Below are positions 3,744-44,251 of a stretch of DNA of 64,000 nucleotides, one piece after another. Source of the DNA: Octopus sinensis (lineage: Eukaryota); NCBI RefSeq assembly GCF_006345805.1, contig NC_042999.1, forward strand, positions 139,252,001 through 139,316,000, in the 5' to 3' direction. The notes beneath the pieces are model-generated. The model ran no database searches, was not told the DNA's origin, and saw only the letters and a list, made by a program, of their open reading frames with translations. Position numbers and translations under genes: made by a program. Numbering within the stretch: position 1 is the stretch's first letter; each line of letters begins with the position of its first letter.

Positions 3744-3758
3744 TTGGCACTGGTAATA
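3744..3758 (-). CDS. VWA gene exon 7 (15-nt microexon): VLPVP; gene continues beyond the left edge
   Basis: ttttcaattcaagttccag|TATTACCAGTGCCAA|gtaagtat. In frame after the VWA exon. Confidence 0.8.
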
Positions 3759-4787
3759 CTGGAACTTGAATTGAAAAGTAAAAATAAGATAATATAGTTC
3801 CTTGTCATAAATATTTCGTATTACAAATATACATACCTATTCGAGATAATGAATGTTTTAATAATTGCATAATGAATACTTGAATACGTTTCCTCAATAT
3901 TCTAATAATGATTATACTGATTGTGTCGTGCGTTTCACACACGTAATTTTTGTTTAAAATGTTTTAGAAATGTTCATATACATTTTATTACTTAACATAC
4001 ATAGACTTGATGTTCTAAGATATATGTATTAATATAACTGTGAATGAAATTATGTATATATGTATGTGTGCAGAAACTGATAAACGTGTAGAGCTATGAT
4101 AATCTTCCAAGTGTGATACATTGAATATAATTTCTGACATCAGAATACATATTAGAATGATTTCACGTGATTATCTGTATAATAAATTAAATAACTGAGT
4201 ACATTCATATCGTTAGCCATGTGCTCTGGTCATGAAATTGGTCTCAGGAAAAATGTTAGTATGCAACAATATTTATGTGTATTTGTTGTTTCAAATATCG
4301 AGGATTTCCATATTTATTTAAACGATCAATAGCTATATAAGAGAGAAACATTTATTGATAACCTATTAAAATGTCTTAAAATCTGAATCTATAGTACTGA
4401 GAATCGTGTCATTCACTGCCGTCGGCCGATAAAGCAGCACACTGTTTTAAGTTTGAAAATGGAAAACATTATCATCTTTTGAATATATTATATTAATGTA
4501 AAAATATGAATTCATTGCACTTCCTAACACGGCATCAAAGTACGTTTTAATCCCTTTTCAACACGATTAGGCATTATTTTACTATTCAATAATTTATTAC
4601 ATTTTAATTATATACTAATTCAATAATACATATCTAGTCTTCCGTTACAACGTGATTCTGAAACTAAAACTGTTCTGACACTAACACTGCCTCGCAATCT
4701 CCGACATTTTCAGAACCATGGAAAATTATGAAGTCTATCCTAGTGCAATAAATTTTACAATGAGTAGTTACAAAATTATATACATAC

Positions 4788-5354
4788 CATTACAAGTTCT
4801 TTTAATTAATTGCTTCGCGATGGACATAAGAGCATTAAAGTTTCTAACTGAAAACACATAATTTCGGCGTGGTGAGCTACCAATAACGTTCAATTCAGAC
4901 CGTTTAATTCCTTTGCCAACACCAATAGCAAACACAATGGCGCCTGTTTTTCGTAATTTCAATGCTGCGATTTTAGTTTTACTGAGACTGTTGGCTTTGC
5001 CATCAGTTAGAACGATAGCAATATTCGGGACACCTTTTCTATCTCCTGCTCCTCGTCTGAATGACCGTGTCCTCAAGTAGTCAAGAGCTCTATTTGTATT
5101 CGTACTTCCGTGTTTGTACTTTATTCTGCTGATTGCCCTGAGCAACCTCCTCTTGTTATAATACTTATTCATCTTAAATTGCAGTTTGACCTTCCCGCTG
5201 AATGTAATGGCTCCCACGCGAATTTTGTTTCTACCAATGTTAAAGGATTTCACTATATTTTGTGCAAATCTTTTCACTTTCTTGAAGTTCGTTGATCCAA
5301 CACTACCAGAATCATCCAAGACGAGCATAACATCAGCAACTGCCTTATCACAAC
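4788..5354 (-). CDS. VWA gene exon 6: complete von Willebrand factor A domain (matrilin/collagen VI-like)
   Basis: 567-nt phase 1-1 exon (tttcttttgtag|...|gtatgt). MIDAS residues DDSGS, HGST and LTDG are present, with flanking Cys (CDK...RTCN). Corresponds to ORF 4768..5328. Confidence 0.93.
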
Positions 5355-6079
5355 CTACAAAAGAAAGATCAATATTTGATGTCTGAGTTATTCGAAGATT
5401 AGTGTAACGGACAGCATTTTGAGATTTTCAATTTGAAATTGCATGTAATGGTGTATTTATTTTATTAGTATTTTTGAGAAGATGAATTACTAAAACATAT
5501 ATATAGCACTGACTATCTTTGCAATTAGTATGGTTATGAAGGTTCTTTGCCAGTAGAGGGATTGTACGAATATAATGTATTGCATTACTGGACTGCGTGG
5601 AGTGTTCCGTTCTTGTGTAAACATTTCATTTCAGGTTACACCACTCTACGTAGCTAGAAATGTAGAAATGAATTCCAACCAAGGACCACTTTAATATCTC
5701 TTTCCGGTTATCACATCCTTAATAGTCAGCTGGCTTAGTTATGGAAAGGCTGATATAGTAACTGCATTCAACTATATATGTACTTATAATAATTATACAA
5801 AACATAGTGATTACTACCAAACCATACCACTCTATGTTGGCGGTGATATATCTTGTTCTCGGTTGCTCCTTCTGGTTATTGATCGTACCATTTCCGTACT
5901 CTTTTCAGGCAGTATCTTTCACATAGCCTCTAGTGGATGAACCTAGCCACGTTATCGTGCCTCCTTTCGTAATACTTTTGGGCTAGCTTCATACACTCAC
6001 TCAAAATTTATAAGATTGTTTCATTTTTATTGCCACACATCCTAAAAAGGGGTGATCCACTACACTTATTTATTTGGAA

Positions 6080-7720
6080 CCTGGTGTAATTGGTTCTCAG
6101 AGCTTATTCCTTGGCGCTGCATATAAATGCCTCAGTGCATCCTTTCAGATAACTTTTTCTTAGCTATCCCCAAGTGTTGGTCTGGTCTTTTCATTCAATT
6201 TCTTTGATGAATTTCCCATGCAGTGGTTTCATCTTGCAGTTGTTTACTCTTTCTTCTTCTTTCTTAAATGCTTGTAGGTACATCTTATTTTTGGTAGGTA
6301 TTATATTGTTAATTCTAACAGCGGCGAGCAAAGATTCACTTTGTTTTTTGATGTACCATCCCAGACTGTTCTTCCCGTTGACAACACAGATCTTGCATCC
6401 TCTGAGACCTCTTCCACTTCTGTTTCTAGGCACATAGAGTCTGTAAGTATTGCTTTCAGGTGTAGCCCCTTGTTAACTGTCATCACTTTTCTAGTTTTCT
6501 TGTCCATTTCCTCAAGCTCGTTATTTGTCCACCTAAGAACACCTGCGCTGTATCGCATTAAGGAAACAGCCCATGTGTTCAATGCCTTGGCGTTGTTTTT
6601 TTCCATTGAATCAACCTCCCATAATTAACGTGGTTCTTCTGAGCTATTTTCGCCTAAAGCTTTCTTTCATTTCACTTTCCTTGATCTTTTCACATTCTAA
6701 AATCCCCAGATATTTATATCCATTAGTTTTAATGTCCTTGGTCTTTTCGCTGTTGGGTAGCACTATACCATCAGACGACCCTAATCTGCCTCTTTGTATT
6801 ATAAGCATATCACAATTTTTAGTCCTAAATTTCATTCTGATATCCTAACTGAATATCCGTATAGTTGAAACTAGGCCATTTATTTCACGTTCGGTCTTTT
6901 CAAAGGTCTTTACATCATCCATATATAACAGATGATTTAGTTTTCCTCCACTTTTGAATGTGTATCCCGATGTCACTTTCCGTAGTATCTGTGTGAGAGG
7001 TATCATACAAATCACAAACAGTAACGGAGATAGACTATATCCTTGAAATATGCCTCTATTAGGTTAACCCTCACCAAAAGTACTTTCCACATGAAGTTAA
7101 CTCTGTATTCCAGTTTTTCATTGATCTCTTAATAAAATTTGATATGCTCTAGACTTTCTAAAATCCAGGAATGGGGGACCATATCATATGCTTTCTTATA
7201 ATCGATCCTCGCCTTGCCTAGATTAGCAAGACTTTTGTTGCAGTCGTTCAGTACCATTCTGTTTATCAGAAGCTGTCCCTCGGCTTTTCCTTCTGAACCC
7301 TTTCTGTTCGACTGGCAGTTTATCATTCATTTCCAGGAAGATATACACATAATTATATATTATACTTGTCATCAGCTTCCATATCAGGGGCAGGCAGGTG
7401 ATAAGCCGGCAATTATTCACTACATTGCTTTTGCTGGGATCCTTTTGGCAAAGAGCTGCTTTGCTTGTGGTCACCCACTTTGAGATTTGTATACCGTTGG
7501 TGATCATTTTATCCATTTGCGTGGCTATTCTTTGGAAATGTTTCAGCCATTATCCTTGTACCCCATCTGGTCCTGGGCATTTCCAGTTTGGAATCTTTGT
7601 TGTCTGTTCGGTTACTGTTCGATATTCTATTATTGCTGTGTTTCACTTCATATTTTTCCGACCTTGGGTCCTTCAACCATTTAGCATATTATTATTATTA
7701 TCATTTATGGTTTCCTTTCA
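6080..7720 (-). mobile_element. Old Dong/R4-like LINE (RT region), heavily mutated
   Basis: Fragments DYKKAYDMVPHSWI, RLITCLPLIWKL, DKKTRKVMT and PLHGKF. Confidence 0.82.
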
Positions 7721-7789
7721 TTATAATTTTATTTCAGCTGTCTTAGTACCGGGCATCCTCCGGAGGCCAACAGTAGCAAGGTCACTTTT

Positions 7790-8160
7790 GTTTTGCTATG
7801 CATGCTACAATTATCACCACATTGTGCTTTCCGTAGTATATGGGCTGTAGCTATCAAGGTTATCTTTTGTAGTTCACGGAGATCGTAGTTACCAATGAGT
7901 TGCTTAATATACTTCCCAGCTCCCTTCTTTATCATTCCCATCGCACCAGTTACTACTGGTATCATCGTAGTACTAAGCATCCACAGTTTTGCGATTTCAA
8001 TTTGCAGATCTTTATAGTGAAAACGCTTTTTGCATTCCTTTCTTGAGACATTTTGATCTTGTGGCACAGACATATCTATTACCAGACAAGTTCCTCTGTT
8101 GGAGTCCTTGATCACAATGTCAGGCCCATTGGAGTCATTTTTTTATCGTTATGTATTGGG
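7790..8160 (-). mobile_element. Dong/R4-like LINE 3' fragment (REL domain)
   Basis: TCLVIDMSVPQD...YKDLQIEI...TAHILRK in ORF 7729..8115. Confidence 0.82.
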
Positions 8161-8341
8161 AAGTTCCAATGGATTTTGAGCCTCACCATTTACTACATTG
8201 GATAGTGCCTGTACCCCTTATCATGGGATTTTATTTTGTAGTATTTACAAGAATTCCAGTGGATGTACTGCCCTAGTTTGTCATGTTTTATGGGGTACAT
8301 ATTATTATCATCATTATCATTATCATTATTATTATTATCAA

Positions 8342-8414
<73 letters not shown>

Positions 8415-8417
<3 letters not shown>

Positions 8418-11400
8418 TAGTATATTTTTTATAGCGTGCTTTCACTTCGCTACCGAGCGCAGCTATGTATGCCTTGGGTATGTGCTGTGATTTGTTGTGA
8501 TGCTCTGATGGTTACTGTATGGAAAGTGTTCTGCGTAGGATGTGTGCAGTGCCTAGTAGTGCAATTTTCTGTATGTTATATGTGTTTGTAAGTCCTGGTG
8601 TTTTTGTTATGTATTTGTCTGAATATTATTTTATCATGCCTATTATGATAGGAATTATTTCTGTTTTTAGATTCCACATTCTGGTTACCTCTATTTCCAG
8701 GTCTTTGTATTTTGAAAGTTTCTCTATTTCTTTTAGAGACACGTTGTCATCTGCTGGTATTGATACATCAATTAGAAAACATTTATTTTCTTCATGATCT
8801 CTGACAACTATATATGTTCTGTTGGCCTTAATTTCTCTATCTGTGTGTATTGGCATATCCCAGGGTATGGTTGCTTTCTCGTTTTCTATGACCTTTTCTG
8901 GTGTGTGCTTATACCATCTTTTTTCTGTTGTTATTTCATAATGCTGGCATAGCTTTCAGTGTATATAGGTCCCAACTCTCTCGTGCCTGTGAATATATTC
9001 CGTCTTAGCCAGGACTGGGCAGCCAGAGATAATATGATTTATTGTTTCTTGTCCATCACATATTCTGCAGTTACTTGTTATATTTCTTTTCATTACATGT
9101 TTTTGGTAATTTCTGGTGGGGAGGCTTTGGTCTTGTGCTGCAATTAAAAATCCTTCTGTCTCTGCTTTGAGTCCTGAGCTTCTCAACCATTGCTGGGATC
9201 TTTCTTTGTCTATTTCTTTTGCATTTAGTTTAGTCCAGTATTTGCCATGAAGGGGCTTTTCTTGCCATCGTTTGATCATGGTTCATTGCTGTTCTATTTT
9301 TAGTTTGGATTTCATTTGTTTTATAGTTTTTGTTGTTTCTTCATCTTCTTCTTCTTCTTCTTCTTCATATTTGTTAGGTGGTATGATTTCTTGTTTGTAT
9401 TTGTCAGCTTCCTTAAATACTGAGAACAGTTTTTTGTTTTGCTCGTGTTTTGCCGCTATTTGCATCAGTTTTCCTTCCTTCTGAAGTAGATATTTTTGCA
9501 GTCCTATGGTGGTTATTTTATAATAGTTTTCCAGCTGTATAAGGCCTCTACCACCTTCTATACGTTGTATATATAGCCTTTCTATGTCAGATTTTGGGTG
9601 ATGCATCCTAGATCCTGTCATTATTTTTCTTGTTTTCCTATCTATTTTGGTCAGTTCATTTAGTGTCCAGTTAAGGATATTGTAGCTGTAACTTATAACT
9701 GGGACGGCTAAAGTGTTGATACCTATTATCTTGTTTTTAGCATTAAGCTCTGTTTTCAGTATTGATCTAACTCGTCTATAATATTCTTTTTTTATTTTCT
9801 TTTTCATTTGTGTGTGTTGTGTCTTATCTAGTTCATGGATTCCTAAGTATTTGTAAGTTTGGCTTTGGTCTAATTCTTTTATTTCATTGGTTTTATCTAC
9901 TGTGATATGGCTACTCTTAACTAGTTTTCCTCTTTTCAGGGTTACTTTGGCGCATTTCTCTAATCCAAATTTCATATCTATTTCTTTGGTAAATCCATGA
10001 ACTGTCTTTAGTAGTGCTTCCAGCTGTTTGTCATTTGTAGCGTATAGTTTTAGGTCATCCATATATAAAAGGTGGCTGATCGTTTTGCCGTAACATTTAT
10101 ATCCGCATCCAGTTCTGTTTAGCATATCCGATAGAGGTGACAGTGCCAAGCAGAAAAGGAGTGGAGAGAGCGTGTCTCCCTGGAATATTCCTCTTCTAAT
10201 GGGGATGACTTTGGTTTTCAAAGGTTCCTCTTTTGTTTGTAGCTGTAGCACTGTATGCCATTTATTCATAGAGTATCCTATGTATCTTATAATTGTTGGT
10301 GTAACTTTGTTAATGGCTAGTGTTTCGAGGATCCATGTGTGGGGGATGCTATCAAACGCCTTTTTGTAGTTGATCCAGGCCATACTGAGGCCTATCTTTT
10401 TTCTGTGGATGTCTTCAGTTATGGCTTTATTGATTATTAGTTGATCTTTACAGCCATATGAGCCTTTGTGGCATCCTTTCTGCTCTTCTGGAAACAGGTT
10501 GTTTTCGTCCAGGTGCTTGTTCAATCTTTGTGATATTACTGCAGTAAATGCTTTGTACATAGTAGGGAGACAGGTTATAAGCCTGTAGTTTTCTGGCTTT
10601 GCTGTCTCGTTTGATTTGGGAATTAAGATGGTTTTCCCCTTCGTGAGCCATTCAGGCATTGTCTCTGGCTCTGCCAGTATGTTGTTAAAGTTTTCAGCCA
10701 GCTTTTTGTGCATTCCTGTTAGATATTTCAACCAGAAGTTGGGGATCTTGTCATGCCCAGGTGCCTTTTAGGTGCTTAGTCTTTGCAGTGCCTGGGTGAC
10801 CTCTTCAGTTGTTATGGGGGTCCAACGTTGCTCAGATGCTGAGTTTGTTGTTGTAATGCTCCTTTGTTTTTGGTTGTTCGTTCGCCGACCATATTTCTCT
10901 CCAAAATTCTTCCACTTCTTCTGCCGTTGGTGCTGCAGTGATTTCTATTTTATTTTTGCCAAGTTCTTGGTAGAACATTTTGGGGTTAGAGTTGAACTGT
11001 TTATTTTGTTCAAAGAAACGTTGGTGTTTCTCGTAACGGAGGATCCTTTGTGCTTGGGAAGGATATCTTGCTTTAGCTTTTCTTTTATCTCAGGTAAATC
11101 TTTTTCTGTGATGTTGTATTTGCGGAGTATTTTTGTTTTCTTTTTGTTGCTCAGTAGCGTTGATTGTCTACTGATTTCATTAAGAATCGACAGATCTTTT
11201 CTAATTTTTTTTATTTTGTTTTGGATGTTATTTATCCACAGGGTTTGTTTGAGTGGTGGTACTCCTGTTTGGATGGGTTTGAGTGAGTATCCAGCTTCTT
11301 TTGTGGCTGCAGTGGCTGCTGCGTATACTAAGTCATTTAGCTCAGTGATATCGCTTTTTGTTTCAGTGGCTATTAGTTCCGTGACGGCTAGGTTTATGCT

Positions 11401-11540
11401 GTTTATAATTGATGTTGTTGTTTTGTCTATTTTGATTTCTGGGAGGTATGGTCGGTGGTCCATTTTGAGCTCTGTGGTTTTCAGTTCTTTGATTATTATT
11501 ATCATTATGAGAGCCACTGTCTGGTACTGCATCAGGGCAT
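8415..11540 (-). mobile_element. Near-full-length Dong/R4-like non-LTR retrotransposon, frameshifted
   Basis: RT ORF 9283..10731 (QGDTLSP, YMDD), CCHC CRICDGQETINHIISGC, and REL motif IDVSIP...EKLSKYKDL. (AAT)n on both sides. Confidence 0.92.
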
Positions 11541-11584
<44 letters not shown>

Positions 11585-11589
11585 CTATG

Positions 11590-14500
11590 TTTGACTTTTG
11601 CTTTATGTTTGTACAAGTTGGCTCCAAGTCTCACCCAGAGACCTCAAGAGACAACAGGTTGGAAGTTCACGTCGTTGTTATGCCTAGTGTGCCATATATT
11701 TGGGGTTTTTTTGTTGTTGTACTAGTGAATAATAAATAAATTTTTAAAAAAAGGTTTGTTTTAAACCTTGAGATTACATAGAGAGTATTTTGCGTAGGAT
11801 ATGAGCAGTTCCCATGAGCACTATCATTTGAATTTCTGCCATTTTGGGGTTTCCTGGTAATGAGTTAGGTAGCAATCAGCCCCTTTCGCTATCATTCCCA
11901 GGGCACCTATGACAACAGGTATTGTTTTAGTCTTCAGGTTCCACATTTTGCTGATTTATATTTCAAGATCTTTATATTTTCCCAGTTTTTGGTAGGTCTC
12001 GACAGACACGTTTATATCGATTGGGACTGTCATATCAATGAGGAGGCATGTTCTTTGTCTGAAGTCCTTCAATATGACGTCTTGCCTGTTTGCATCTATC
12101 TTCCTGTCAGTTTGAATGGTGAAGTTCCAGAGGAGTAAGATGTGGTCATTTTCAAGCACTGGAGGTGGATTGTGTTCCCACCAGTTTTTTTCATGGGGCA
12201 AATCCAGGTTTTTGCAAATTACCCAGTGAATATATTGTGTAGCTCTATCATACCTGTTGAGGTACTCTGTAGGCGCTAGAAGACTGGTTTCATTTTGTTG
12301 TCGACATACACGACATGTTGGGCTACTGCCGTTCTTTAATATGTTGGCCTGGTAGTTTCTTGTTGGTAGGCATTGATCTTGAGCTGCTATGATAAACCTT
12401 TCTGTTTCAGATTTTAAGCCAGAAACCATTAGCCATTGATGGGTCAGGGCTTTGTCAATATTTGCATTATTCGCTCTCTTTGGGTATTTGCCATAGAGAG
12501 GTTTTTCTTGCCATTTATTATTCAGAATATCTAAGGCCGCAGTTTTGGCACGGGTTTTCATGCGCTTAGCTTTTTCTGTGCTTGTTTCTTGTATGACTAT
12601 CTCTAATTCCGAAATTTGTTGTATTCGTAATTCACTTAGATATTCCTTTGCCTGTTTTGTTACTGAGTATGATGCTTTCTTGTTTTCAAGTTTTGAGACA
12701 AGTTTTAACATCCTCAGACTTTTTCAGGTAGGTGTCTAGGACAATTGTAGCAATCTTCATTGTTATTGCCAGTTGTAAAAGACCACGGCCTCCCTCTTTT
12801 CTTGGCAGATAAAGTCGTTCTGTATCTGCCTTGGGGTGGTGCATTCTATGCATTGTCAACAGTTTTCGTATTTTTCTGTCAAGCTGACATATTTCAGTAA
12901 TTGACCAGTTAACGATATTGAAACTGTAAGTCACGACTGGTATGGCTAATGCAGTGATCGCTTCGATCCTGTTTCTTGCATTCAGCTCTGTCTTGCGTAT
13001 TGCTCTCACTCTTCGATAACATTCTCTCCTGATCCTTTCCTTCATCTCTGGATGCCTTATTCCGTCCCCTTCAATTACCCCTAGGTACTTGTAGCTCTCC
13101 GCTGGGTCTAGTTTTTTATGACATTCTGCTGGTCAATGTTAACGTTAGATGTTTCTGTAATTTTTCCTATGATAAAGGTAGCTTTTGCACATTTATCGAG
13201 GCCAAATTGCATTCTGATGTCGTCACTGAATTGTTTGACTATCGCTAGTAAGCCCTTGAGTTGTTGGTCATTTTTTGCAAAACGTTTTAAATCATCCATG
13301 TAAATGATTTGATTTATATTTTTATCAAACATTTTATACCCGTACTGCGCGTCATTGAGCAGTTTTGAGAGAGGTATTAAGGCAGAAAGTCACCCTGGAA
13401 AATGCCACATGAAATTTTTACATCACCAGCATTTAGGGATTCATTGTCACTGTTCAAAGTTAGTGTGGTTCTCCATGATCTCATACTTACAGTCAAACAT
13501 TTTCGCAGAGTAGGTGCTATCTTATAAATTTCCAGGCATTTCTTAATCCAGCTATGTGGTAGGCTATCAAAAGCCTTTTTTATAGTCTATCCAGGCTATT
13601 GATAAGTTTTTGTGTCGTTTGTGAAAATCTTCTAAGATCATCTTATTGATGAGTAGTTGATCTTTACAACCGTAGGATCCACATTTACATCCTTTCTGTT
13701 CCTTAGGGAATATGCTGCTGTCTGTTAAAAAACTATAAGTATATTCCGTCAGGACAGATGTTTGCGTTTTATACATAGTTGTTAAGCAGTTTTTTGGTTC
13801 ATTTGTTTCTTCACTTTTTGGAAGCAGGAGTATTAACCCATTAACTAGCCAAGGAGGCATCCTACTAGGGTGTTGCAAAACATCATTGTACAGTTCTGTT
13901 AGCAGTTCATGGCTCTCTGGGAAGGCATTCAGCCAGAAGTTAGGAATTTTATCCTTTCCTGGAGACTTCCATTTGCTTGACCTCCTGAGAGCAGATCTTA
14001 TATCTTCTACCTTGACACCCTCCCACTTTTGCTCTTCTAAGGAGTCCCGTTCTGTAGATATTCTGTCAATCCAGGGGGCCTTTTCGTTGTGTGTTTTTTC
14101 TTCTGCCCAAATTTTATTCCAAAATCCCTGCACTTCTTCTTTTGATGGTACAGACCTTACAGTAACTGCTGTTTTTCCTATCTTCCTGTAAAAGTTTTTG
14201 GGGTTATTTTTGAACATGTTGTCCTTGAAAAATCTAACACGCTTTTCACACCTCGCTATGCGGGCAGCTTTGGCAGATACCTTTTGTTTGATGGTTTCTA
14301 TGGTGGCATCAATATCAAGTATAGTTTTCATATTATATTTTTTCATTAATTTTGGGGTTTTTGTAGGTTTGGTAGTCTTGTGAACCTTAAGGTTTTTCAA
14401 ATATTCAATGTCAGATCTAAATAGTTTAATTTGTTGTTGCAAACGCTCTTGCCAAGAAGGCTTTTTGTGGGAATGTTGCCGTTTTCTAATCTTTACACCA

Positions 14501-15318
14501 CATAGGATCGTTGAGATTTTCGCAGATGCATAGTATAGGTGGTTGAGATTTGTAATATCAACATCATTAGCTGAAATTATATCCTTAAGTGCAAGCCGGA
14601 TTTTACCAATTATTTTCACGTTTTGGTTAGAGTTGCGGATTTTAGAGAGTGCATCGCGTTCATCCATGCTGGTTTCTTTAATTTTCAGCCATTCAATCAT
14701 GATTTGATTTTTTAGCTCATGTAGTTCTGTTGGGTCAATATTTGTGTGACTTTCTTTATCTATTTGATGTTCATTTGTGTTTATGAATGGTTCAGGGAGT
14801 ATTTCACTTTGCCTATCACTTATACTAACTCTTTCAATCCTTACTTCGTTTATATCAGCCCTGGGCTGGTCTATAATTATTTCCTCTGTATTATCCTCTC
14901 TAACTGCAGCTTCGTTCATTTTATCCGTTACTGCTTGTCTAACTTGATCAATCTCAAACTTCAGTCAGTAATTTTTTTTATAATGTTTCTTCTGACGTTG
15001 GCAAGTTTGTTACTGTCTATGTAGGGTCTTGTTTCAGGGTGTTTCTGTCTCCAGTTTAAGTATGTTTGTGCAGTGCTCGATTTATCTGTGGGGAAATATA
15101 TGGCATGGTAGAAGGCCGCAAGAACTTCTTTATTATCTTCCCTAGACCATTTTTCCTTCTTTTTCTTTTGATTATTTGGTGACGAGCATGGATGGCCATC
15201 TGTTGGAATATTCCGGTTGTGGGGTACGTCCAGCTCCTGTGTGTTGGGAAGATTTGATCCAGTAGCCGATTTTTCAATCAGAATTTGGTTCAATTTTCTG
15301 GTACGTGGTCTTTTGTAA
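11590..15318 (-). mobile_element. Near-full-length Dong/R4-like non-LTR retrotransposon (second family), frameshifted
   Basis: ORFs 13567..14919, 13108..13332 (YMDD), 12686..13045 and 11956..12711 (CRVC knuckle, IDMTVP...YKDL). (AAT)n on both sides. Confidence 0.92.
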
Positions 15319-15336
15319 TTATTATTATTATTATTA

Positions 15337-15395
<59 letters not shown>

Positions 15396-33030: not shown

Positions 33031-33044
33031 GCATGCAAGATACG

Positions 33045-33509
33045 TTGATACAAAAGAGGTCTAAATGGGGCTGGAAGGGGATTAAAATTTACAGGAGGGG
33101 GTAACCTGAGGTAAGAAATTCATTGGGAGACGTTTTGGGGCCTTTTTGTGGTTGCTTTGGTGTGAAAACGGGGATTTTATTAATTTTGGGGGACACTTGG
33201 CGGTCTAGATTCGACACCTTTTGCCCGATTTCAATCAAATTTTCAACATGGCAAAGTGGAATCGGATTTGTAATTTAAGCGCGGAAATCTAATTTTTTTA
33301 TACATGGGAGAGTGATAGATAGAGAAAGATAGAGATTAAGAGAAAGTGATGGAGAGTCCGAGAGAAAGGAAGAGTAAGAGAGTGGGAAAGTGAGAGAAAA
33401 AGGAGAGAGAAACAAAGAGGGAGAATGTGACGATAAGAAACAGAAAGGAAGCAACAGAAAGTAACAACCACACCCTCACCCGCGCGTAGAGTGGGTCACC
33501 TTAAGCTAG
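33045..33509 (+). mobile_element. Non-autonomous Helitron-like element
   Basis: Ends in a GC-rich hairpin followed by CTAG|T. Confidence 0.45.
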
Positions 33510-34625
33510 TCTGCTTTATATTTGTGAAAACAGCGGACGTTGTCTCAGAAGCAGTTGTGCAGGCAAAAGTTTTTAGTAAATGTGGTCGGATTGATCTGAA
33601 AATTTGCACGCCTTAGTTAAAAGTGCTGGGGAAGGCAATTTTGAGTTTGCTCAATTGAAAGGTGTGGCCTCTAGGGCAAAAAAAGGTTCTCTTCGATCGA
33701 TTTGGGGGTGTGGAGTTCGTGTTTTTTGTGCAATTTCAATAAAACACACGACTGCATGAACCTCAGGCTCTTTTGTATCAAATGCATGCAAAATGTTTTG
33801 GAAAATTTCGCAAACAACACAAGATTTATTCAAAAAACTATTACTGGTTACTTTTTTTTTTGCGCCTGCTTAAATCTTATTGGGCGTTTGCTTCTGCCAC
33901 TTTGCATTTTTTTGCCAAATAAAAATGGTACCTGCATGTAGTGTGTGATGAGATATATTATCTATATTTTTAATCACTCAAAAATTCAGTCGATAAGTAC
34001 AAAAATATTCAAAGAGATTAGTAAATTAACTATTTTTTGTACCAATTTTGTGGAACGGGCGAAGGCGAATGTTGCTCACGTTTGGCCGCAAAGGCTTATC
34101 AATATTTTTTCTTGTGTCAAGGGCTTGCGTAGTACGTGAGCTAGCGCACGAAGGCGATTACTATTCAACAGCTATTTTGCTTTTAAGTTTTAATTAGAGC
34201 TTGATTTTTTTTATATTTTAATTCCTTCAACGTCGATACAAAAGGGATGAAAGTATATAAATGTTATTAAAACGATAAAAATAAAGATTGGGCGCTGATT
34301 CCGCAAAATTGGGTTGGGTGCGACTACGTATTGTACTCAAAAGATTGTGAGTGCAGTCATATTATACTGTTTCAGTTTTTTGTAGAGACATGATTGGTGT
34401 TTTTTTTTTCCAGCATTTCCCCGTCATTTTTGCGCTTCACATCTGCATTTGCGAGGTTTCTCCAATCACTTCTCAAAGATTGTTTAAATATTTGGCATAC
34501 TTTTTTTCATTACCAATTTTTAATAAAATTTTCGTTTTTTTCTTTTTTAATTCCTCATCTTTAAAATTTGGCCCGTGTAGACTCGAATGAAATCGGGTTA
34601 GAATACTATCATATATATATGTATA

Positions 34626-34953
34626 TGGAGCACTCCGTCGGTTACAAGGACGAGGGTTCCAGCTGATACGATCAACTGAACAGCTTGCTCGTGAAATTAA
34701 CGTGCAAATGGTTGAGCAATCCTCAGACACGTGTGCTCCCTAACGTAGTTCTCAGGGAGATTCAGCGAGACACAGAATGTGACAAGGTTGGCCCTTGGAA
34801 ATACAGGTACAACTTATTTTTACCAGCTGAGTGGATTGGAGCAACGTGAAATAAAGTGTTTTGCTCAAGGATACAACGCATCGCCGGGAATAGAACTCAT
34901 GACTTTACAATCGTGAGTCGAATGCCCTAACCACTAAGCCACGCACCTTCACA
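34626..34953 (-). mobile_element. tRNA-derived SINE, near full length
   Basis: Minus-strand head with A box TGGCTTAGTGG and B box GAGTTCTATTCC, then a TCCTTGAGCAA..CACTTTATTTCAC body. A fragment of the same family lies at 56935-57040. Confidence 0.8.
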
Positions 34954-34985
34954 CTAACACACACACACACGCACACATGTATACA

Positions 34986-35650
34986 CAGAGGGGTTGGACA
35001 AAATAATGGAAACACCTAGCATCATAGCATCATAATTTTAAAATTTCTATAAAATCGTAAAAAGCTTGCTTATTTTTATACTTTTTGAACTATTATTAGT
35101 GTTGCTTAATATGTTTTGCTAAAATTGCTGTTTCTTTTTCAGATATCGTCAGACAAAGGTAATTAAAATTCATTAAAATGACAGATCTATCGGACATTGA
35201 AAGAGGTAAAATTGTTGTAGCGTAACGAAAACAGCCGAAATGTTTGATTATCAAGAAGTACTGTCTTGAAAGTAATGGCAACCTTTGAGAAAGAGGGAAA
35301 AACCTCCTCGTCGAAACAAAACTCTGAAAGAAAACCAAAGCTTTCAGATAGGGACCGTCGGATCTTACGCGAATTCATAGAAAGGATCACAAAAGTACAG
35401 CTCCCAAAGTTACTGCAGAGCTTAATGACCACCTGGAGAACCCAGTTTCCACAAAAACTGTTCACCGGGAGCTGCACAATGGGAGGGCTGCAATCAGAAA
35501 ACCACTACTTTCAAAAAGAAACGTTGCAAAGCGTTTAGAGTGGAGAAAAAGCATGCAGAATTGTTCCCTAGAGCAGTGGAAGAATGTTATTTTCTCGGAC
35601 GAGTCATCCTTTCCCATATATCCGACTACCGGGCGAGTATACGAGTAGAG
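34986..35650 (+). mobile_element. Tc1-like transposon, 5' half
   Basis: TIR-like CAGAGGGGTTGGACAAAATAATGGAAACACC. Transposase relics KPKLSDRDRR, RKPLLSKRN and SDESSF. Confidence 0.8.
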
Positions 35651-35659
35651 ACAGCAAAA

Positions 35660-36300
35660 AGAAGTGTGTGTTGCGTTTATCTGGGTGTGCGCTGTGTTTA
35701 TCTGGAAGTGCGTGTTGCGCTTATCTGGGTAGTATGTGTATGCGTGTACATTCTGCGCATGTTGGTACTGAGTAAGCGTTTGTGTGGGTATATTATGTGG
35801 GTTGTGTGGGTATATGTGGGTATGGTTTATGTAGTTTCCGGGTGTGTGCACATGTGTGTTCTGTATTTGTGAGTGGTTTGTTTTGTTTGTATTGTTAGTG
35901 CAGTGTGTGTGTATACGTGTGGATGTGTTTGTGTGAGTGTGTCTATGTGTCTTGTATTTTTCAGGGAGGTGTGTGTGTAACACACACGGACACACATAGA
36001 ACCCCTGATAAATGCAACACACTCACACACACATACACACCTACATACACCCACACATACTCACACACACATACATATGCACACTAACACACTCATACAG
36101 TTGCTCACATTCACACACACACCACCGAGACAATTATAACAACACAAACACACTCAGAGACACACACACGCTCACACCATTCTAGCCCCTTAGACCAACC
36201 CCCAAAACCACTGAACCATGACAGACTAGCCCAGAGACAAAAAAAATCCTTTTGATTCCACATTGTTCTTCCTTCCCCCACAACCAACCTCACACGCTAT
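35660..36300. repeat. Degenerate TG-rich then CA-rich low-complexity tract
   Basis: Direct reading. Confidence 0.8.
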
Positions 36301-36526
36301 CCCTTAAAATATTTTTTTTTACTACCCACAAGGGGCTAAACACAGAGGGGACAAACAAGGACAGACAAACGGATTAAGTCGATTACATCGACCCCAGTGC
36401 GTAACTGGTACTTAAGTTATCGACCCCGAAAGGATGAAAGGCAAAGTCGACCGCAAATATTCCTTAGCTACACGCAAGACAGAAAATGTCAGACAGACAG
36501 GTCGGTTATTCCTCTCCAATTTTTTG

Positions 36527-36611
<85 letters not shown>

Positions 36612-36809
36612 ATATGTTTGTGTGTCTGTGTTTGTCCCCCCCCCCCACCATCGAGTGACAACCGATGCTGGTGTGTTTACGTCCCCGTCACATAGCGGTT
36701 CGGCAAAAAGAGATCGATAGAATAAATCCTGGGGTCGATATGCTCGACTAAAGGCGGTGCTCCAGCATGGCCGCAGTCAAATGACTGAAACAAGTAAAAG
36801 AGTAAAAGA

Positions 36810-36844
<35 letters not shown>

Positions 36845-36845
<1 letters not shown>

Positions 36846-36958
36846 CCAACGCCAGAACAACATCGATTTCTTCGTCTGCCGTAAGGCATTATTTTTACTC
36901 ACACGCCAGCTAATTTGAATTGTCTAAAGTCGAAAGACGCCCGTTGTCCTTGTCCTGC

Positions 36959-36991
<33 letters not shown>

Positions 36992-37000
36992 TACTACTAC

Positions 37001-37067
<67 letters not shown>

Positions 37068-37825
37068 GATTTTTATTTTTTGTATTTATTTTCGTATAAC
37101 TTTTTGTTTTTTGTATTTATTTTCGTGTAACATCGTCCGCTTTTCTGTCCTTGTTCAGTATACTTTCGATCCTTTTTCCAAGAAATCTAATGCTCGTATC
37201 TTAGTTTTTCCTTGGGGCTGGCCAGATCGGAGCAATCTTAAGATTAATCAGCCGAAATTGCCAGGATGATCCGGTTCTTGACTGAAGATTAGAGGCTTCG
37301 AATGACCCGTCCGTTTTCGTATCGTCTATTTGAATGTTTGCGTTCTTTTCCCATTTTATATATTTTTTATACATATATTTTTGCGGCGTACGTACAAACT
37401 TTCCTCTTATATGTATGTAAGCATTCCACTAAACTCTGTACGACTACTACACACACTTTCTCTGTTTTTCTCTTTTCTCACTTCTTTGATTCTTTGGTCT
37501 CCTCTTTCCCCACCCTCTCACATCTCTCTGCTTTTCTTACTCTGCACTTCACTGACCCTACCTTTCTTTTGTCCCGCCAATTCTTGGCACGCTCTCTTTC
37601 TTCTCCCTCTCTTTAATTCCTTCTTTCTCTCTTTTTCTCTCTCTTCTCCCTCTCTTTAATTCCTTGCCCCTTTTTTCTCTCTCTTCTCACGTGACCGCCG
37701 TGACCAGAACAACGGCTTCTGACCAGAACAACATCGATTTCTTCGTCTGCCGTAAGGCATTATTTTTCTTACACGCCAGCTAATTTGAATTGTCTAAAGT
37801 CGAAAGACGCCCGTTGTCTTTGTCA

Positions 37826-37880
<55 letters not shown>

Positions 37881-38160
37881 GTTGTTTTTTGTATTTATAT
37901 TCGTATTACTTTTTGTTTTTTGTATTTATTTTCGTGTAACATCGTCCGTTTTTCTGTCCTTGTTTCGTATACATTCGATCCTTTTTCCAAGAAATTTAAT
38001 GCTCGTAGCTTAGTTTTTCCTTGGGGCTGGTCAGATCGGAGCAATCTCAAGATTAATCAGCCGAAATTGCGAGGATGATCTGGTTCTTGACTGAAGATTA
38101 GAGGCTTCGAATGACCCGTCCGTTTTCGTATCGTCTATTTGAATGTTTTGCGTTCTTGTC
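36845..38160 (+). repeat. Two direct copies of a ~450-480 bp repeat with internal (ATT)n
   Basis: 36845-37350 and 37720-38160 align end to end. Confidence 0.85.
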
Positions 38161-38199
38161 CCATTTTACATATATATATATATATATATATATCACACC

Positions 38200-38345
38200 T
38201 CTTTCAGCACTATGACTGGGTTTTGAAATAGCTACTTGACCATTTAGATGTCAGTGTGACATACCTTGACTTTGCACTTTGCATAGGCATTTGATAAGGT
38301 AGATCATCGCCTGATATCGTAAGATGCGCAGACTTGGCATTACGG
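38200..38345 (+). mobile_element. CR1/Jockey-type RT relic
   Basis: Degenerate LDFA..AFDKVDH motif. Confidence 0.55.
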
Positions 38346-38393
38346 AGATGTACTTGCATAGCTAGTGACCTGATCTGAGGTCGTGTGCTGGAA

Positions 38394-38695
38394 CGAAAAG
38401 ATTTACAGCGTGGAAGTTGTTTATAAGCCATTTAAGAAATACACAAAAACCGTTAGATTCACTTTAATGTTTAAATTTAATTAGCTAAAATATCTTCGTC
38501 GCTTTGAGACCGCGACCTGTTCACTGACAAAATTCCGTGATGCAGCACGGAATTTTGTCAGTGAACAGGTCGCGGTCTCAAAGCGACGAAGATATTTATT
38601 TTGGCTAATTAAATTTAAACGTTGAAGTGGATCTAACGGTTTTTGTGTATTTCTTAAATGGCTTATAAACAACTTCCACGCTGTAAATCTTTTCG
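38394..38695. repeat. Fold-back palindrome, ~146-bp arms, 6-nt spacer, with two mutated G3-C8 hammerheads
   Basis: Arms 38394-38539 and 38546-38695. Confidence 0.92.
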
Positions 38696-39329
38696 TAAAT
38701 CATTTATATGTGTGTGTGTGTTCGCCACCACTGCTGGTGTTGGTGAGTTTATATCCCTGTAAGCTAGCGGCTCGGTGAAGAAACCGATAGGATAAGTATC
38801 AGGCTGAAATAGATAAGTATTGCTGTCGATTCGCCTGAATAAAATTTTCGAGGTAGTGCCCTAGTATTGCCGCAGTCTAACGAGCGATATCGTAGAGAGA
38901 GAGAAAGAGGGGGGACAAACACAATCACACACACACACACACACACACATGCACACATGCACACACGCACACACACACACATGAAGACTGACAGAGTCAC
39001 AAGAAATGAGAAATAGATGCTATATCTTCCTTGGACATGATCGTGCTTCTCTTTGCCCTCTTAATCGTCTATTTCTGAAAATAAACGCACTCATAAAACA
39101 TAATCTACGGAACAACAAAGAGGGGTGGAAGAGGATATTACTTTTCATATACACACTGGTGTACAAATTAGGAAAATATGAAACAGTCAAAAAGTCATTT
39201 ACACTCTTATGAATTATCGACAATATCGTTAATAAAGCTAGGGCCATAAATATAATCTACAGATAGCGGTTATAGTAATTATAGCATTACATGGCAACTC
39301 TAACAATGATTTCTAATTTTGGCACAAGA

Positions 39330-39630
39330 CCAGAAATTTCCAAACGATGGACGAAATGCCGCTAAGCATTTTGCCCGGCGTGTTAACAATTGTACCAGCT
39401 CGCCGACTTCATGCAAGCTCTAATAATCATTTCTTTTCAAAGCACAATGCCTGACATTAGGAGGAAGAGGTTAAATCGATTACATCGACCGAAGTGCTCA
39501 ACTGGTACTTAATTTATCAACTCCGAAAAGATGAAAAGCAAAATCAAACTCAGCGGCATTTGAAAACAGAACGTAAATACGGACGAAATGCCGCTAAGAT
39601 TTTTTTCCGGTGTGCTAACGGTTCTACTAG
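39330..39630 (-). mobile_element. tRNA-derived SINE (two partial copies)
   Basis: Reverse complement of the 16191-type family. Confidence 0.65.
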
Positions 39631-39775
39631 CTTACTTTCTTAATGCTGACACTAATAATGCCAATATTTCTTATGTTTGGTAACGAATGGATTTTTTTTC
39701 TGATCAAGTTTACAATGATAGTGTAAAGGAAAGTAATTTCAGATTTTCGTTAAAATGGGAAAAGTGACAACTTAC

Positions 39776-39793
39776 TGATAATTTTCCGCGACA
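39776..39793 (-). CDS. VWA gene exon 3 (18-nt microexon): LSRKII
   Basis: Strong polypyrimidine acceptor ttttttcttatctgctttcag and donor gtaagttg. Length 3n, open in phase 1. Confidence 0.7.
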
Positions 39794-43073: not shown

Positions 43074-43112
43074 ATGGCTCTCCTGCTGCAATTAGGCATA
43101 ATGCCAAAAGAG
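43074..43112 (-). CDS. VWA gene exon 2 (39 nt): ALLALCLIAAGEP, second half of signal peptide
   Basis: Acceptor ttatctcattgcag and donor gtaagtaa. Phase 1-1. Completes a hydrophobic h-region ending A-A-G. Confidence 0.85.
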
Positions 43113-43955
43113 CTGCAATGAGATAATGTTATTTATTAGACAAAACATTACAAATAAGCATTGTATTTTGACAGTTTGTCAAAAAGAATAATAATTTATT
43201 GTAAGCAATTTAATTCTATTATAAACGATCATTATTATTATTTTCCCTTTCCCCGCAGCGTGATGCATGAGAAATTTGGCGCTCACAGTATTGAAAATCG
43301 TAACGTAAAACTACAAAACTAGGTGTTAAAACTGTTATACTATTATTTCTCTACTTCAAGTGAACCGCTGCCATTTATATAAAAAATTGGTAACTTTAAC
43401 TATACACAAATTTATAGAGTAGGCATGACAGATGCTAGTGTGTTCCTCAAAACATAGATGAAGCATAACAACTGAGTGAATTGTAACATCAGGAATGAAT
43501 TGAAAGCGCACTGTTCCTTATAATGACGCTGCACCTCTATTTATATAATTAATTGGAACTAACTCTGATATCTTGAAATATATTAGCTAGTTCTAGCAAT
43601 TTCATGCTCTCTACAATATGAAAATTATTCTCGTCTGTATAATTCTTGTAATTTGTATTTAATGCCTTATTGTTGGATCATTGTCAGAAATACATTCCAA
43701 TGTGACCGACTGTCACTCTTCAAAGTCGATCATTTAACATTTGATTCTGAACGTCAACGAGATGGATTATGAAGATCGAGATGGGTGGAGGATCAATATC
43801 ATGCAAATACGAGTTAGCTCTTCTTTATAATAATTAATTATGAATATATGGTAAAATCTACTACACTCGCATATCTTCTTTTAAAAAATGCATCAAGCGT
43901 CATATTTGCTATGTTAATAAACCAATTGTGACTTGATCAGACAAAACATTTATAT

Positions 43956-44037
<82 letters not shown>

Positions 44038-44174
44038 CATAGCTTTCTATTATTGAATGATATTTCAAAATGAAATCTCAAAATATATCTTGTAACTCAA
44101 TTAAAGATGTCTATATATCATAAAAGACGAGACAGAAATATTATCCAAGAAAGTGCAAACACAATGATACTTAC

Positions 44175-44205
44175 CAGCAAAAGCTGCAATTACCGATAAC
44201 TTCAT
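44175..44205 (-). CDS. VWA gene exon 1 (coding part): MKLSVIAAFA, first half of signal peptide
   Basis: ATG AAG TTA TCG GTA ATT GCA GCT TTT GCT G followed by the consensus donor GTAAGTAT. Ends in phase 1. Confidence 0.85.
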
Positions 44206-44242
44206 CTCGGCAAATTGTGCTGCCACTTTCCAAAAACCGAAA

Positions 44243-44251
44243 CTTTATATA
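44243..44251 (-). promoter_or_regulatory. TATA box of the VWA gene
   Basis: Minus strand reads TATATAAAG. An Inr-like GCAGCAC lies about 30 nt downstream and the ATG lies 46 nt downstream of the first T. Confidence 0.7.

What the first reader, a model, noticed from the sequence alone, without database searches (positions are those of the whole stretch)
3744..44251. A 40-kb gene hidden as a chain of phase-1 microexons
Only one exon shows in the ORF track. Six further exons of 31, 39, 18, 36, 15 and 15 nt, each with a GTAAGT donor and the internal ones with pyrimidine-rich acceptors, splice to one open frame with a signal peptide split over two exons and a Lys/Pro-rich linker. All internal exons are symmetric phase 1-1, so any can be skipped without frameshift. 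Introns are 1062, 3280, 18218, 4212, 11940 and 1029 nt. Automated annotation probably misses or mis-joins these exons.
Basis: partly seen in the sequence, partly recalled or inferred. Interest (0 to 1): 0.72.

Follow-up and report, generated by a model that had tools for sequence, protein, structure and literature searches.

The report
Octopus VWA gene start, tiny exons
The finding is the real 5' part of a large secreted multi-VWA matrix-type gene of the common-octopus group, whose signal peptide and short proline-rich linkers sit on tiny exons separated by transposon-filled introns; this is an ordinary gene architecture that three public annotations model badly, not a new kind of system.

Summary
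The window is about 98% identical to Octopus vulgaris chromosome OX597816.1.

How well each part is supported:
- **Exon 1, its TATA motif, exon 2 and both VWA-exon borders:** conserved in Argonauta hians.
- **Exons 1-3 joined to the VWA exon:** reproduced in an O. bimaculoides model.
- **The 15-nt linker exons 5 and 7:** part of a repeated family. A third, older copy keeps 11/12 exon bases and 7/8 donor bases, while its flanks are only 39-51% identical.
- **Exon 4:** supported only by its own sequence signals and a low false-positive rate, 2 hits in about 286 kb of antisense DNA.

The gene is not 40 kb. It runs off the window. In O. vulgaris it continues through four more VWA-plus-linker units and VWD exons.

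All three public models mis-handle the start. The O. vulgaris model uses a first exon with no signal peptide and cuts every VWA domain short. The Argonauta model skips exon 2. The O. bimaculoides model reads into an intron.

No transcript data could be consulted. Verdict: real, ordinary, useful mainly for annotation.

The parts
44244..44251 (-). TATATAAA motif, the putative TATA box, 46 nt upstream of the ATG
   Evidence: Read directly from the sequence. The same octamer lies at a similar distance from the ATG (about 42-48 nt, depending on which of two in-frame ATGs is used) in the Argonauta hians locus L004. Promoter function is inferred.
44175..44205 (-). Exon 1 coding part, 31 nt: MKLSVIAAFA plus 1 base. 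It encodes the first half of the signal peptide. Donor GTAAGT, ends in phase 1.
   Evidence: Matches the N-terminus of O. bimaculoides P0001. Homologous to Argonauta exon 1, which has the same GCTG|GTA(A/T)GTAT junction.
43074..43112 (-). Exon 2, 39 nt, phase 1-1: (A)LLALCLIAAGEP. It encodes the second half of the signal peptide.
   Evidence: P0001 carries the same residues. A 39-nt phase 1-1 homologue with the same borders lies at L004 11622-11660. Exons 1+2 give a hydrophobic core with a 12-aa Kyte-Doolittle (hydropathy) mean of 2.87.
39776..39793 (-). Exon 3, 18 nt, phase 1-1: LSRKII
   Evidence: passes the strict filter. P0001 has LIRKAI at the same place. No equivalent was found in Argonauta.
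21522..21557 (-). Exon 4, 36 nt, phase 1-1: (K)KPDIFPIKPGK. Candidate linker exon.
   Evidence: passes the strict filter. The O. vulgaris orthologue at L003 6891-6926 has one non-synonymous change. It is absent from the P0001 model and has no paralogous copy. This is the least supported exon.
18410..18446 (-). Alternative first exon used by the O. vulgaris model CAI9720130.1 (MLFQVKFHTEPQ, 37 nt, donor GTAACA). Probably spurious.
   Evidence: An exact copy is present in the window, corresponding to L003 10001. It has no hydrophobic core (Kyte-Doolittle hydropathy mean 0.45). It lies inside intron 4 of the chain.
17295..17309 (-). Exon 5, 15 nt, phase 1-1: (K)PPAP(S). Linker microexon before the first VWA exon.
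   Evidence: passes the strict filter. It is identical in O. vulgaris. It is paralogous to exon 7 and to L003 74313-74324. Against the latter, the exon is 11/12 identical and the donor 7/8, while the flanks are 39-51% identical.
17243..17494 (-). Duplicated block that carries exon 5
   Evidence: 79% identical over 257 nt to 3691-3937 (alignment).
4788..5354 (-). VWA exon, 567 nt, phase 1-1, donor GTATGT. It encodes one complete von Willebrand factor A domain bounded by Cys residues.
   Evidence: Pfam PF00092, E=6.6e-48, profile positions 1-173 of 174. Both borders are conserved in Argonauta. It is 95% identical to the first VWA exon of O. vulgaris. The DxSxS, T and D residues of the metal site are readable in the translation.
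3744..3758 (-). Exon 7, 15 nt (or 21 nt from the acceptor at 3764), phase 1-1: (V)LPVP(S). Linker microexon between VWA units. The frame stays open past it.
   Evidence: Six copies lie about 7.2 kb apart in O. vulgaris, five of them about 1 kb after a VWA exon. The resulting peptide CN-VLPVP-SC fits the C-x-V-x-P...C linkers of distant multi-VWA relatives.
3691..3937 (-). Duplicated block that carries exon 7
5355..17294 (-). Intron 5, 11,940 nt. It holds three non-LTR reverse-transcriptase copies (6404-7585, 9286-11499, 12713-14919).
   Evidence: Pfam RVT_1; tblastn copy map.
21558..39775 (-). Intron 3, 18,218 nt. It holds an inverted pair of reverse-transcriptase elements (24620-28070) and microsatellites.
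1..3743 (-). Start of intron 7. It contains a mariner remnant (2569-2985) and long trinucleotide arrays. The gene leaves the window here.
   Evidence: In O. vulgaris the next VWA exon lies 5.7 kb beyond the linker.

Best explanation
The span is the promoter and first seven coding exons of a large secreted multi-domain gene of the Octopus vulgaris species complex.

Proposed structure, 5' to 3':
1. A TATA-type promoter drives a transcript whose signal peptide is split over a 31-nt and a 39-nt exon.
2. Three small phase 1-1 exons (18, 36 and 15 nt) add a Lys/Pro-rich spacer.
3. A single 567-nt phase 1-1 exon encodes a complete VWA domain with an intact metal-binding motif.
4. A 15-nt (or 21-nt) exon adds a Pro-rich linker before the next VWA exon, which lies outside the window.

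In O. vulgaris the same gene continues with four more near-identical VWA-plus-linker units spaced about 7.2 kb apart, then VWD-domain exons, and possibly more. The introns are long because retrotransposons, mariner copies and microsatellites have accumulated in them.

The product is most likely an extracellular, collagen-VI-alpha3-like or PTMP1-like array of VWA domains that binds matrix ligands through its metal sites.

Shown: all sequence features, conservation of exons 1 and 2 and the VWA borders, and the family of linker microexons.

Inferred: actual splicing of exons 4, 5 and 7, the transcription start, secretion and function.
For: - **Sequence anatomy:**
- **Species and locus:** the window is about 98.2% identical and colinear with OX597816.1. 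O. vulgaris protein CAI9720130.1 has five VWA domains followed by a VWD domain.
- **Exon 1 and promoter:** the TATATAAA motif and the exon 1 junction are conserved in Argonauta.
- **Exon 2:** conserved in Argonauta with the same length, phase and borders.
- **VWA exon:** acceptor phase and TGT-NNN-G|GTATGTAT donor conserved in Argonauta. It encodes a complete Pfam VWA domain.
- **Exons 1-3 joined to VWA:** the O. bimaculoides model has the same join.
- **Specificity of the microexon filter:** 4 chain exons against 0 hits on the opposite strand, 0.86 per 128 kb in shuffles and 2 per about 286 kb of antisense cephalopod DNA.
- **Linker microexon family:** there are three diverged copies. Between exon 5 and the oldest copy, the exon is 11/12 identical and the donor 7/8, while the flanks are 51% and 39% identical.
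- **Family architecture:** distant multi-VWA relatives carry the same kind of short Pro-rich inter-domain linker.
- **Signal peptide:** the hydrophobic core appears only when exons 1 and 2 are joined.
- **Intron size:** transposable elements fill the long introns.
Against: - No transcript, EST or peptide evidence could be consulted.
- The closest relative's model (P0001) joins exon 3 directly to the VWA exon, without equivalents of exons 4 and 5.
- Argonauta has no convincing equivalents of exons 3-5.
- The O. vulgaris consensus model uses another first exon and an internal donor.
- Exon 4 has no paralogue or distant orthologue.
- The window and O. vulgaris are too similar (98%) for conservation to say anything about exons 4 and 5.
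- The VWA exon differs from its O. vulgaris counterpart at 9 non-synonymous codons against 2 synonymous. Constraint on the protein therefore looks weak, and expression is not guaranteed.
Confidence: 0.72

Rival explanations
1. Only exons 1, 2, 3 and the VWA exons are used, as in the O. bimaculoides model. Exons 4, 5 and 7 are pseudo-exons that are never or rarely spliced in, and VWA exons are joined directly (…CN-G-CDK…).
For: - P0001 joins LIRKAI directly to the VWA domain.
- The Argonauta model joins VWA exons directly at some junctions, and no equivalents of exons 3-5 were found there.
- All these joins are in frame.
- Exon 4 is unsupported outside the species complex.
Against: - About 0.3 false sites are expected in the span, against three observed beyond exon 3.
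- The PAP-type microexon is a conservation island across an old duplication.
- Relatives have Pro-rich linkers, not a two-residue Cys-to-Cys join.
- Short-read-based models routinely lose 15-nt exons, and the Argonauta model demonstrably lost the conserved 39-nt exon 2.
Confidence: 0.2
2. The O. vulgaris annotation is right. Transcription starts at the 18446 exon. Each VWA exon is cut at the internal ATTG|GTAGCT donor. The upstream signal-peptide exons belong to nothing, or to another gene.
For: CAI9720130.1 is an EVidenceModeler consensus that could draw on Iso-Seq and RNA-seq. Its first exon is intact in the window.
Against: - The model has no signal peptide although it consists of extracellular VWA and VWD domains.
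- It removes about the last 30 residues of every VWA domain, including the closing Cys. All homologues keep these residues.
- The full-length exon border is conserved in Argonauta.
- Exons 1-2 are conserved and are joined to a VWA exon in O. bimaculoides.
- Its C-terminus looks like read-through into non-coding sequence, and the next model starts in the middle of an EGF-like stretch.
Confidence: 0.04
3. The locus is a decaying or silent tandem array. The exon chain is a fossil of a gene that is no longer expressed.
For: Between the window and O. vulgaris the VWA exon has 9 non-synonymous codon changes against 2 synonymous. The only protein on record is 'hypothetical predicted'.
Against: - All six VWA reading frames examined are intact and full length.
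- The metal-site residues are kept.
- Every splice site of the chain is intact in both genomes.
- The signal peptide is 22/23 identical to the O. bimaculoides relative.
- A high non-synonymous rate also fits fast-evolving secreted proteins and gene conversion among copies.
Confidence: 0.04

Closest known systems
Octopus vulgaris CAI9720130.1 / A0AA36APU3, 'hypothetical predicted protein' (OX597816.1, GCA_951406725.2)
   Same: It is the same locus. The window's minus strand 28355..1 aligns colinearly at about 98% identity, and the first VWA exon is 95% identical at protein level.
   Different: The public model lacks exons 1-5 and starts at a 37-nt exon with no signal peptide. It truncates each VWA domain at an internal donor and omits every linker microexon. 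The window may come from another haplotype or assembly, or from the sister species O. sinensis.
Octopus bimaculoides XP_014769910.1, 'collagen alpha-1(XIV) chain-like' (old Gnomon model)
   Same: The signal peptide is 22/23 identical, an exon-3 peptide is present, and there is a single VWA domain about 70% identical.
   Different: It has no equivalents of exons 4 or 5. Its C-terminus is a read-through of the homologous intron (the tblastn alignment continues to 4747). Whether it is an orthologue or a paralogue is undecided.
Vertebrate collagen VI alpha-3 N-terminal VWA array (PDB 9han_C)
   Same: It is the best solved match, with repeated VWA domains in series. From my own knowledge, each N-terminal VWA domain of COL6A3 is encoded by one exon of about 600 bp in phase 1-1, and some of these exons are alternatively spliced.
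   Different: No collagen Gly-X-Y region was seen in the window or in CAI9720130.1. The linkers sit on separate microexons, and VWD domains follow the array.
Mussel proximal thread matrix protein 1 (PTMP1, PDB 4cn8)
   Same: It is the second-best solved match (E=1.3e-44). It is a molluscan secreted protein made of tandem VWA domains.
   Different: PTMP1 has two VWA domains and is a byssus protein. Nothing links the octopus gene to a comparable tissue.
Schistosome micro-exon genes (MEGs); described from my own knowledge
   Same: Both encode secreted products with a run of symmetric microexons whose skipping keeps the frame.
   Different: In MEGs most of the coding sequence is made of microexons. 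Here microexons contribute 154 of 721 coding bases in the window, and far less of the whole gene. There is no evidence of combinatorial skipping.
Argonauta hians GAB1600458.1 (locus L004)
   Same: It has the same promoter motif, exon 1, 39-nt exon 2 and VWA exon borders. The VWA domain is 51% identical.
   Different: EGF exons of 113 nt sit between VWA exons where Octopus has the 15-nt linker. The public model skips exon 2 and seems to fuse three tandem gene copies.

Membership tests
von Willebrand factor type A domain (Pfam PF00092) | Full-length match to the domain profile above the curated cut-off | tested here: met
   163.6 bits against a cut-off of 23.8, covering profile positions 1-173 of 174.
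von Willebrand factor type A domain (Pfam PF00092) | Metal-ion-dependent adhesion site residues (DxSxS, a downstream T, and D in the TDG strand) | tested here: met
   Read from the translation: LDDSGS, GSTNT and LTDG. The assignment of these residues to the site rests on general knowledge of the fold, not on a structure computed here.
Collagens with VWA domains (types VI, XII, XIV), as in the database name 'collagen alpha-1(XIV)-like' | A collagenous Gly-X-Y triple-helix region | tested here: not met
   None is present in the spliced window product or in the 1086-aa O. vulgaris protein. Parts of the gene beyond L003 were not seen.
Phase 1-1 extracellular module exons (exon-shuffling class) | A domain encoded by one exon that both starts and ends in phase 1 | tested here: met
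   The VWA exon 5354..4788 has these properties. So do the Argonauta VWA and EGF exons.
Secreted protein with a cleavable signal peptide | An N-terminal basic residue, a hydrophobic core of about 10-20 residues, and small residues at positions -3 and -1 | tested here: inconclusive
   MK, then LSVIAAFAALLALCLIAA, then G-EP, with a Kyte-Doolittle hydropathy mean of 2.87. An A-x-G site can be read by eye. No signal-peptide predictor was available.
Schistosome-type micro-exon genes | Most of the coding sequence is built from symmetric microexons of 36 nt or less, between conventional terminal exons | tested here: not met
   The six small exons give 154 nt and one is 39 nt. The VWA exon alone is 567 nt, and at least four more VWA exons follow.
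Schistosome-type micro-exon genes | Protein variation produced by differential microexon skipping | not testable with these tools
   No transcript data were accessible.
Neuronal microexon programme (SRRM3/4-dependent) | Neural-specific inclusion directed by an upstream UGC-containing enhancer | not tested
   A literature search for cephalopod microexons returned nothing relevant. There are no expression data.

The most novel reading that the evidence does not exclude
The locus could be a cassette system. It would combine a highly conserved split signal peptide, a set of phase 1-1 linker microexons, and a tandem array of near-identical but fast-changing VWA exons. These could be combined in different ways to give a repertoire of secreted adhesion or recognition proteins. 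This would resemble schistosome micro-exon genes or alternatively spliced COL6A3, and possibly evolve under diversifying selection.

A second thread is that the 15-nt linker exon may be the vestige of an EGF-domain exon that Argonauta still has at the same position.
Probability: 0.08. Interest if true: 0.55.

Novelty: new member of a known kind. Interest (0 to 1): 0.24.

Why it matters
The main value is practical. Three independent cephalopod annotations get this gene's start wrong in three different ways:
- *O. vulgaris*: the wrong first exon.
- *Argonauta hians*: the conserved 39-nt exon is lost.
- *O. bimaculoides*: the model reads through into an intron.

As a result the protein looks non-secreted or truncated in the databases. 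Secretome, matrix-protein and gene-family studies in octopods would inherit these errors.

A corrected model gives a secreted multi-VWA protein whose signal peptide is much better conserved than its domains. That may be worth a look for people studying cephalopod extracellular matrix, adhesion or immunity.

The architecture itself is textbook: phase 1-1 module exons, small linker exons and introns swollen by transposons.

Tried and rejected
1. **Exact-sequence look-ups.** Searches for P0001 and for the window's own VWA ORF found nothing. The O. bimaculoides locus could therefore not be examined for exons 4 and 5.
3. **First word-index search.** It did not return the O. vulgaris protein, although that protein is 94% identical. 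It was found only by the exhaustive search.
4. **Loci L001 and L002.** These come from an ENA metagenome assembly and their VWA domains are 46-49% identical. They are too distant to inform on the microexons.
5. **More VWA exons or relics.** A search of the window found only the one exon.
6. **Argonauta equivalents of exons 3-5.** Nothing convincing lies between its exon 2 and first VWA exon.
7. **Linker microexon as a remnant of the Argonauta EGF exon.** An in-frame read-through of the exon 5 block gives ..PTCSCTR.., compared with ..YTCSCKT.. in the EGF exon, a 10/11 nt match. The local DNA alignment is not significant (P about 0.15 and 0.27), so this remains a speculation.
8. **Literature.** A search for cephalopod microexons returned nothing relevant.
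9. **Window versus O. vulgaris conservation.** At 98% identity it cannot separate exons from introns.

Full report
**What is in the sequence.**

The window is eukaryotic: about 36% G+C, full of microsatellites and transposon ORFs. The only long ORF with a cellular domain is 4768..5328 on the minus strand.

| Element | Coordinates (minus strand) | Length | Notes |
|---|---|---|---|
| TATATAAA motif | 44251..44244 | 8 nt | 46 nt upstream of the ATG |
| Exon 1 (coding) | 44205..44175 | 31 nt | starts at the ATG |
| Exon 2 | 43112..43074 | 39 nt | |
| Exon 3 | 39793..39776 | 18 nt | |
| Exon 4 | 21557..21522 | 36 nt | |
| Exon 5 | 17309..17295 | 15 nt | |
| VWA exon | 5354..4788 | 567 nt | donor GTATGT |
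| Exon 7 | 3758..3744 | 15 nt | alternative acceptor at 3764 |

- The introns are 1062, 3280, 18218, 4212, 11940 and 1029 nt.
- All six small exons end in GTAAGT, and all internal exons are phase 1-1.
- The joined frame reads MKLSVIAAFAALLALCLIAAGEP/LSRKII/KKPDIFPIKPGK/KPPAP/S-VWA-CN/VLPVP.
- The frame is still open at 3744, where a further GTAAGT donor follows. The remaining 3.7 kb of the window hold a mariner remnant and trinucleotide arrays but no exon. The gene therefore runs off the window.
  - The exon 2 acceptor is only 55% pyrimidine.
  - Exon 7 has an in-frame alternative acceptor 6 nt upstream.

**Is it more than chance?**

I applied a strict filter: at least 70% pyrimidines upstream, no AG in the 12 nt before the acceptor, AG|12-45 nt (a multiple of three, open in phase 1)|GTAAGT.

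- It finds four sites on the minus strand of the window, all in the chain, and none on the plus strand.
- Block-shuffled sequence gives 0.86 per 128 kb.
- The antisense strands of the window and four cephalopod loci give 2 hits in about 286 kb.
- Every hit on a sense strand of the window, L003 or L004 is a gene-consistent exon.
- About 0.3 false sites are expected in this 40-kb span. Three are seen beyond exon 3, which has independent support.

**Where it comes from and what the gene is.**

- The VWA exon encodes a complete PF00092 domain (profile positions 1-173 of 174). Its best solved relatives are the collagen VI alpha-3 VWA array and mussel PTMP1.
- An exhaustive protein search found O. 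vulgaris CAI9720130.1, 94% identical. It has five tandem VWA domains followed by a VWD domain.
- Its locus, L003, is colinear with the window's minus strand 28355..1 at about 98.2% identity. The window therefore comes from the O. vulgaris species complex: another haplotype or assembly, or O. sinensis. Reported heterozygosity is 1.22% (PMC10700109).
- In L003, five full-length VWA exons are spaced about 7.2 kb apart, each followed after about 1 kb by a copy of the exon 7 linker.
  - A sixth linker copy follows the array, together with duplicated VWD exons.
  - The next annotated gene starts in the middle of an EGF-like coding stretch, so the two models may be a single gene.
- The '40-kb gene' is therefore only the 5' part of a gene of roughly 90 kb or more.

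**Support for each exon.**

- *Exon 1.* Exon 1 and its TATATAAA motif are conserved in Argonauta hians (locus L004), including the GCTG|GTA(A/T)GTAT junction.
- *Exon 2.* It has an Argonauta homologue of identical length, phase and borders, encoding AILVLSQCTEGKP.
- *Signal peptide.* Only exons 1 and 2 together give a proper hydrophobic core.
- *VWA exon.* Its acceptor phase and its TGT-NNN-G|GTATGTAT donor are conserved in Argonauta.
- *Exons 1-3 joined to VWA.* The old O. bimaculoides model XP_014769910.1 reproduces this join. Its signal peptide is 22/23 identical and it has LIRKAI where the window has LSRKII.
- *Exons 5 and 7.*
  - They lie in a duplicated block of about 250 nt that is 79% identical.
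  - A third, older copy lies at L003 74313-74324 (CACCAGCACCAA|gtaagtaa). It keeps 11/12 exon bases and 7/8 donor bases relative to exon 5.
  - The aligned flanks of that third copy are only 51% and 39% identical to exon 5's. That makes the microexon an island of conservation.
  - More distant multi-VWA proteins carry short Pro/Lys-rich linkers of the form C-[ENK]-V-x-P...C between domains. The peptide CN-VLPVP-SC has the same form.
- *Exon 4.* It rests only on its consensus signals and the low false-positive rate. Its O. vulgaris orthologue differs by one non-synonymous base.

**Evidence against the full chain.**

- The O. bimaculoides model goes from exon 3 straight to the VWA exon.
- Argonauta shows no convincing equivalents of exons 3-5.
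- No transcript data could be reached.

**State of public annotation.**

- *O. vulgaris.*
  - The model starts at a 37-nt exon with no hydrophobic core. An exact copy of that exon sits in the window at 18446..18410, inside intron 4.
  - The model skips exon 5. It leaves each VWA exon at an internal ATTG|GTAGCT site, dropping about the last 30 residues including the closing Cys.
  - It omits every linker exon.
- *Argonauta.* The model skips the conserved exon 2 and appears to fuse three tandem gene copies, because the exon 2 homologue recurs at 11622, 48249 and 86207.
- *O. bimaculoides.* The model ends in read-through of the homologous intron.

**How it most likely works.**

This part is inference from domain content. 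The product is probably a secreted protein with a short basic, Pro-rich N-terminal spacer and a string of VWA domains separated by short Pro-rich linkers. The VWA domains have intact metal-site residues. VWD and possibly EGF modules follow. This fits a matrix or adhesion protein of the collagen-VI-alpha3 or PTMP1 type.

The long introns are explained by three non-LTR retrotransposon copies in intron 5, an inverted retroelement pair in intron 3, and mariner and microsatellite sequence elsewhere.

**Comparison with known systems, and novelty.**

- Phase 1-1 single-exon modules and small linker exons are the classical architecture of extracellular mosaic genes.
- The database label 'collagen-like' reflects VWA similarity only. 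No Gly-X-Y region was seen.
- The gene is not a schistosome-type micro-exon gene, because microexons make up only a minor part of the coding sequence.
- The locus is already public and partly annotated. What is new is a better 5' model.
- I rate it as a new member of a known kind, with low interest.

**Unusual points that remain open.**

- The signal peptide is far better conserved than the VWA domain.
- The VWA exon differs from its O. vulgaris counterpart at 9 non-synonymous codons against 2 synonymous.

These leave a small chance of a fast-diversifying cassette system.

Noticed in passing
window 4788-5354 compared with L003 23151-23717: The VWA exon differs from its O. vulgaris counterpart at 13 of 567 bases, giving 9 non-synonymous codon changes against 2 synonymous. 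Between the window and O. bimaculoides P0001 the signal peptide is 22/23 identical while the VWA domain is only about 70% identical. A conserved signal with a fast-changing mature domain is typical of rapidly evolving secreted proteins. Gene conversion among the tandem copies could also contribute.
   Followed up: partly
L003 74313-74324 (O. vulgaris, downstream of the window's gene part): This is a third, diverged copy of the Pro-Ala-Pro linker microexon: 12 nt, phase 1-1, GTAAGT donor. Its exon and donor are conserved but its flanks are near random identity. It follows an EGF-like exon and precedes an intron of more than 7 kb.
   Followed up: partly
L003 71610-72546: The first O. vulgaris model ends in a peptide that looks non-coding. 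The next model's ATG sits inside an EGF-like coding stretch (..CKCKKGHVIKRGKCV|gtaagt). The two annotated genes may be one gene split in two.
   Followed up: no
L004 11622-11660, 48249-48287, 86207-86245 (Argonauta hians): The 39-nt signal-peptide exon recurs three times, once before each VWA-EGF-VWA-EGF-VWA block. The 1682-aa Argonauta 'gene' is probably three tandem copies fused, and each copy's exon 2 is missed.
   Followed up: partly
window 17195-17309 and 3644-3758, compared with L004 15148-15260: In Argonauta a 113-nt EGF exon lies about 0.9 kb after the VWA exon, where Octopus has the 15-nt linker about 1.0 kb after it. In-frame read-through of the exon 5 block gives ..PTCSCTR.., compared with EGF ..YTCSCKT.. 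(10/11 nt). The alignment as a whole is not significant. The linker could be a vestige of an EGF exon.
   Followed up: partly
window 24620-28070 and 54699-56933: Three copies, 94-96% identical at protein level, of an element with a reverse-transcriptase ORF followed by a Cys-rich ORF. Two of them form an inverted pair inside intron 3. The second ORF carries a GIY-YIG-like motif typical of Penelope-like elements (my own knowledge), but Pfam matched only RVT_1.
   Followed up: partly
window 6404-7585, 9286-11499, 12713-14919: Three diverged non-LTR reverse-transcriptase copies lie in intron 5, all in the same orientation as the gene.
   Followed up: partly
window 2569-2985, 47936-48679, 59165-59683: Mariner-type transposase remnants (Pfam Transposase_1). 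One of them lies in intron 7.
   Followed up: partly
window 557-2336: Very long trinucleotide arrays (AAG/CTT and AAT/ATT types) produce spurious ORFs of 100-236 aa on both strands.
   Followed up: no
L001 and L002 (ENA assembly ERZ21867824): Contigs filed under a metagenome assembly carry mollusc-like VWA, VWD and EGF exons with introns. One holds a perfect 6.9-kb tandem duplication of a VWA exon. This is eukaryotic host DNA inside a metagenome record.
   Followed up: no
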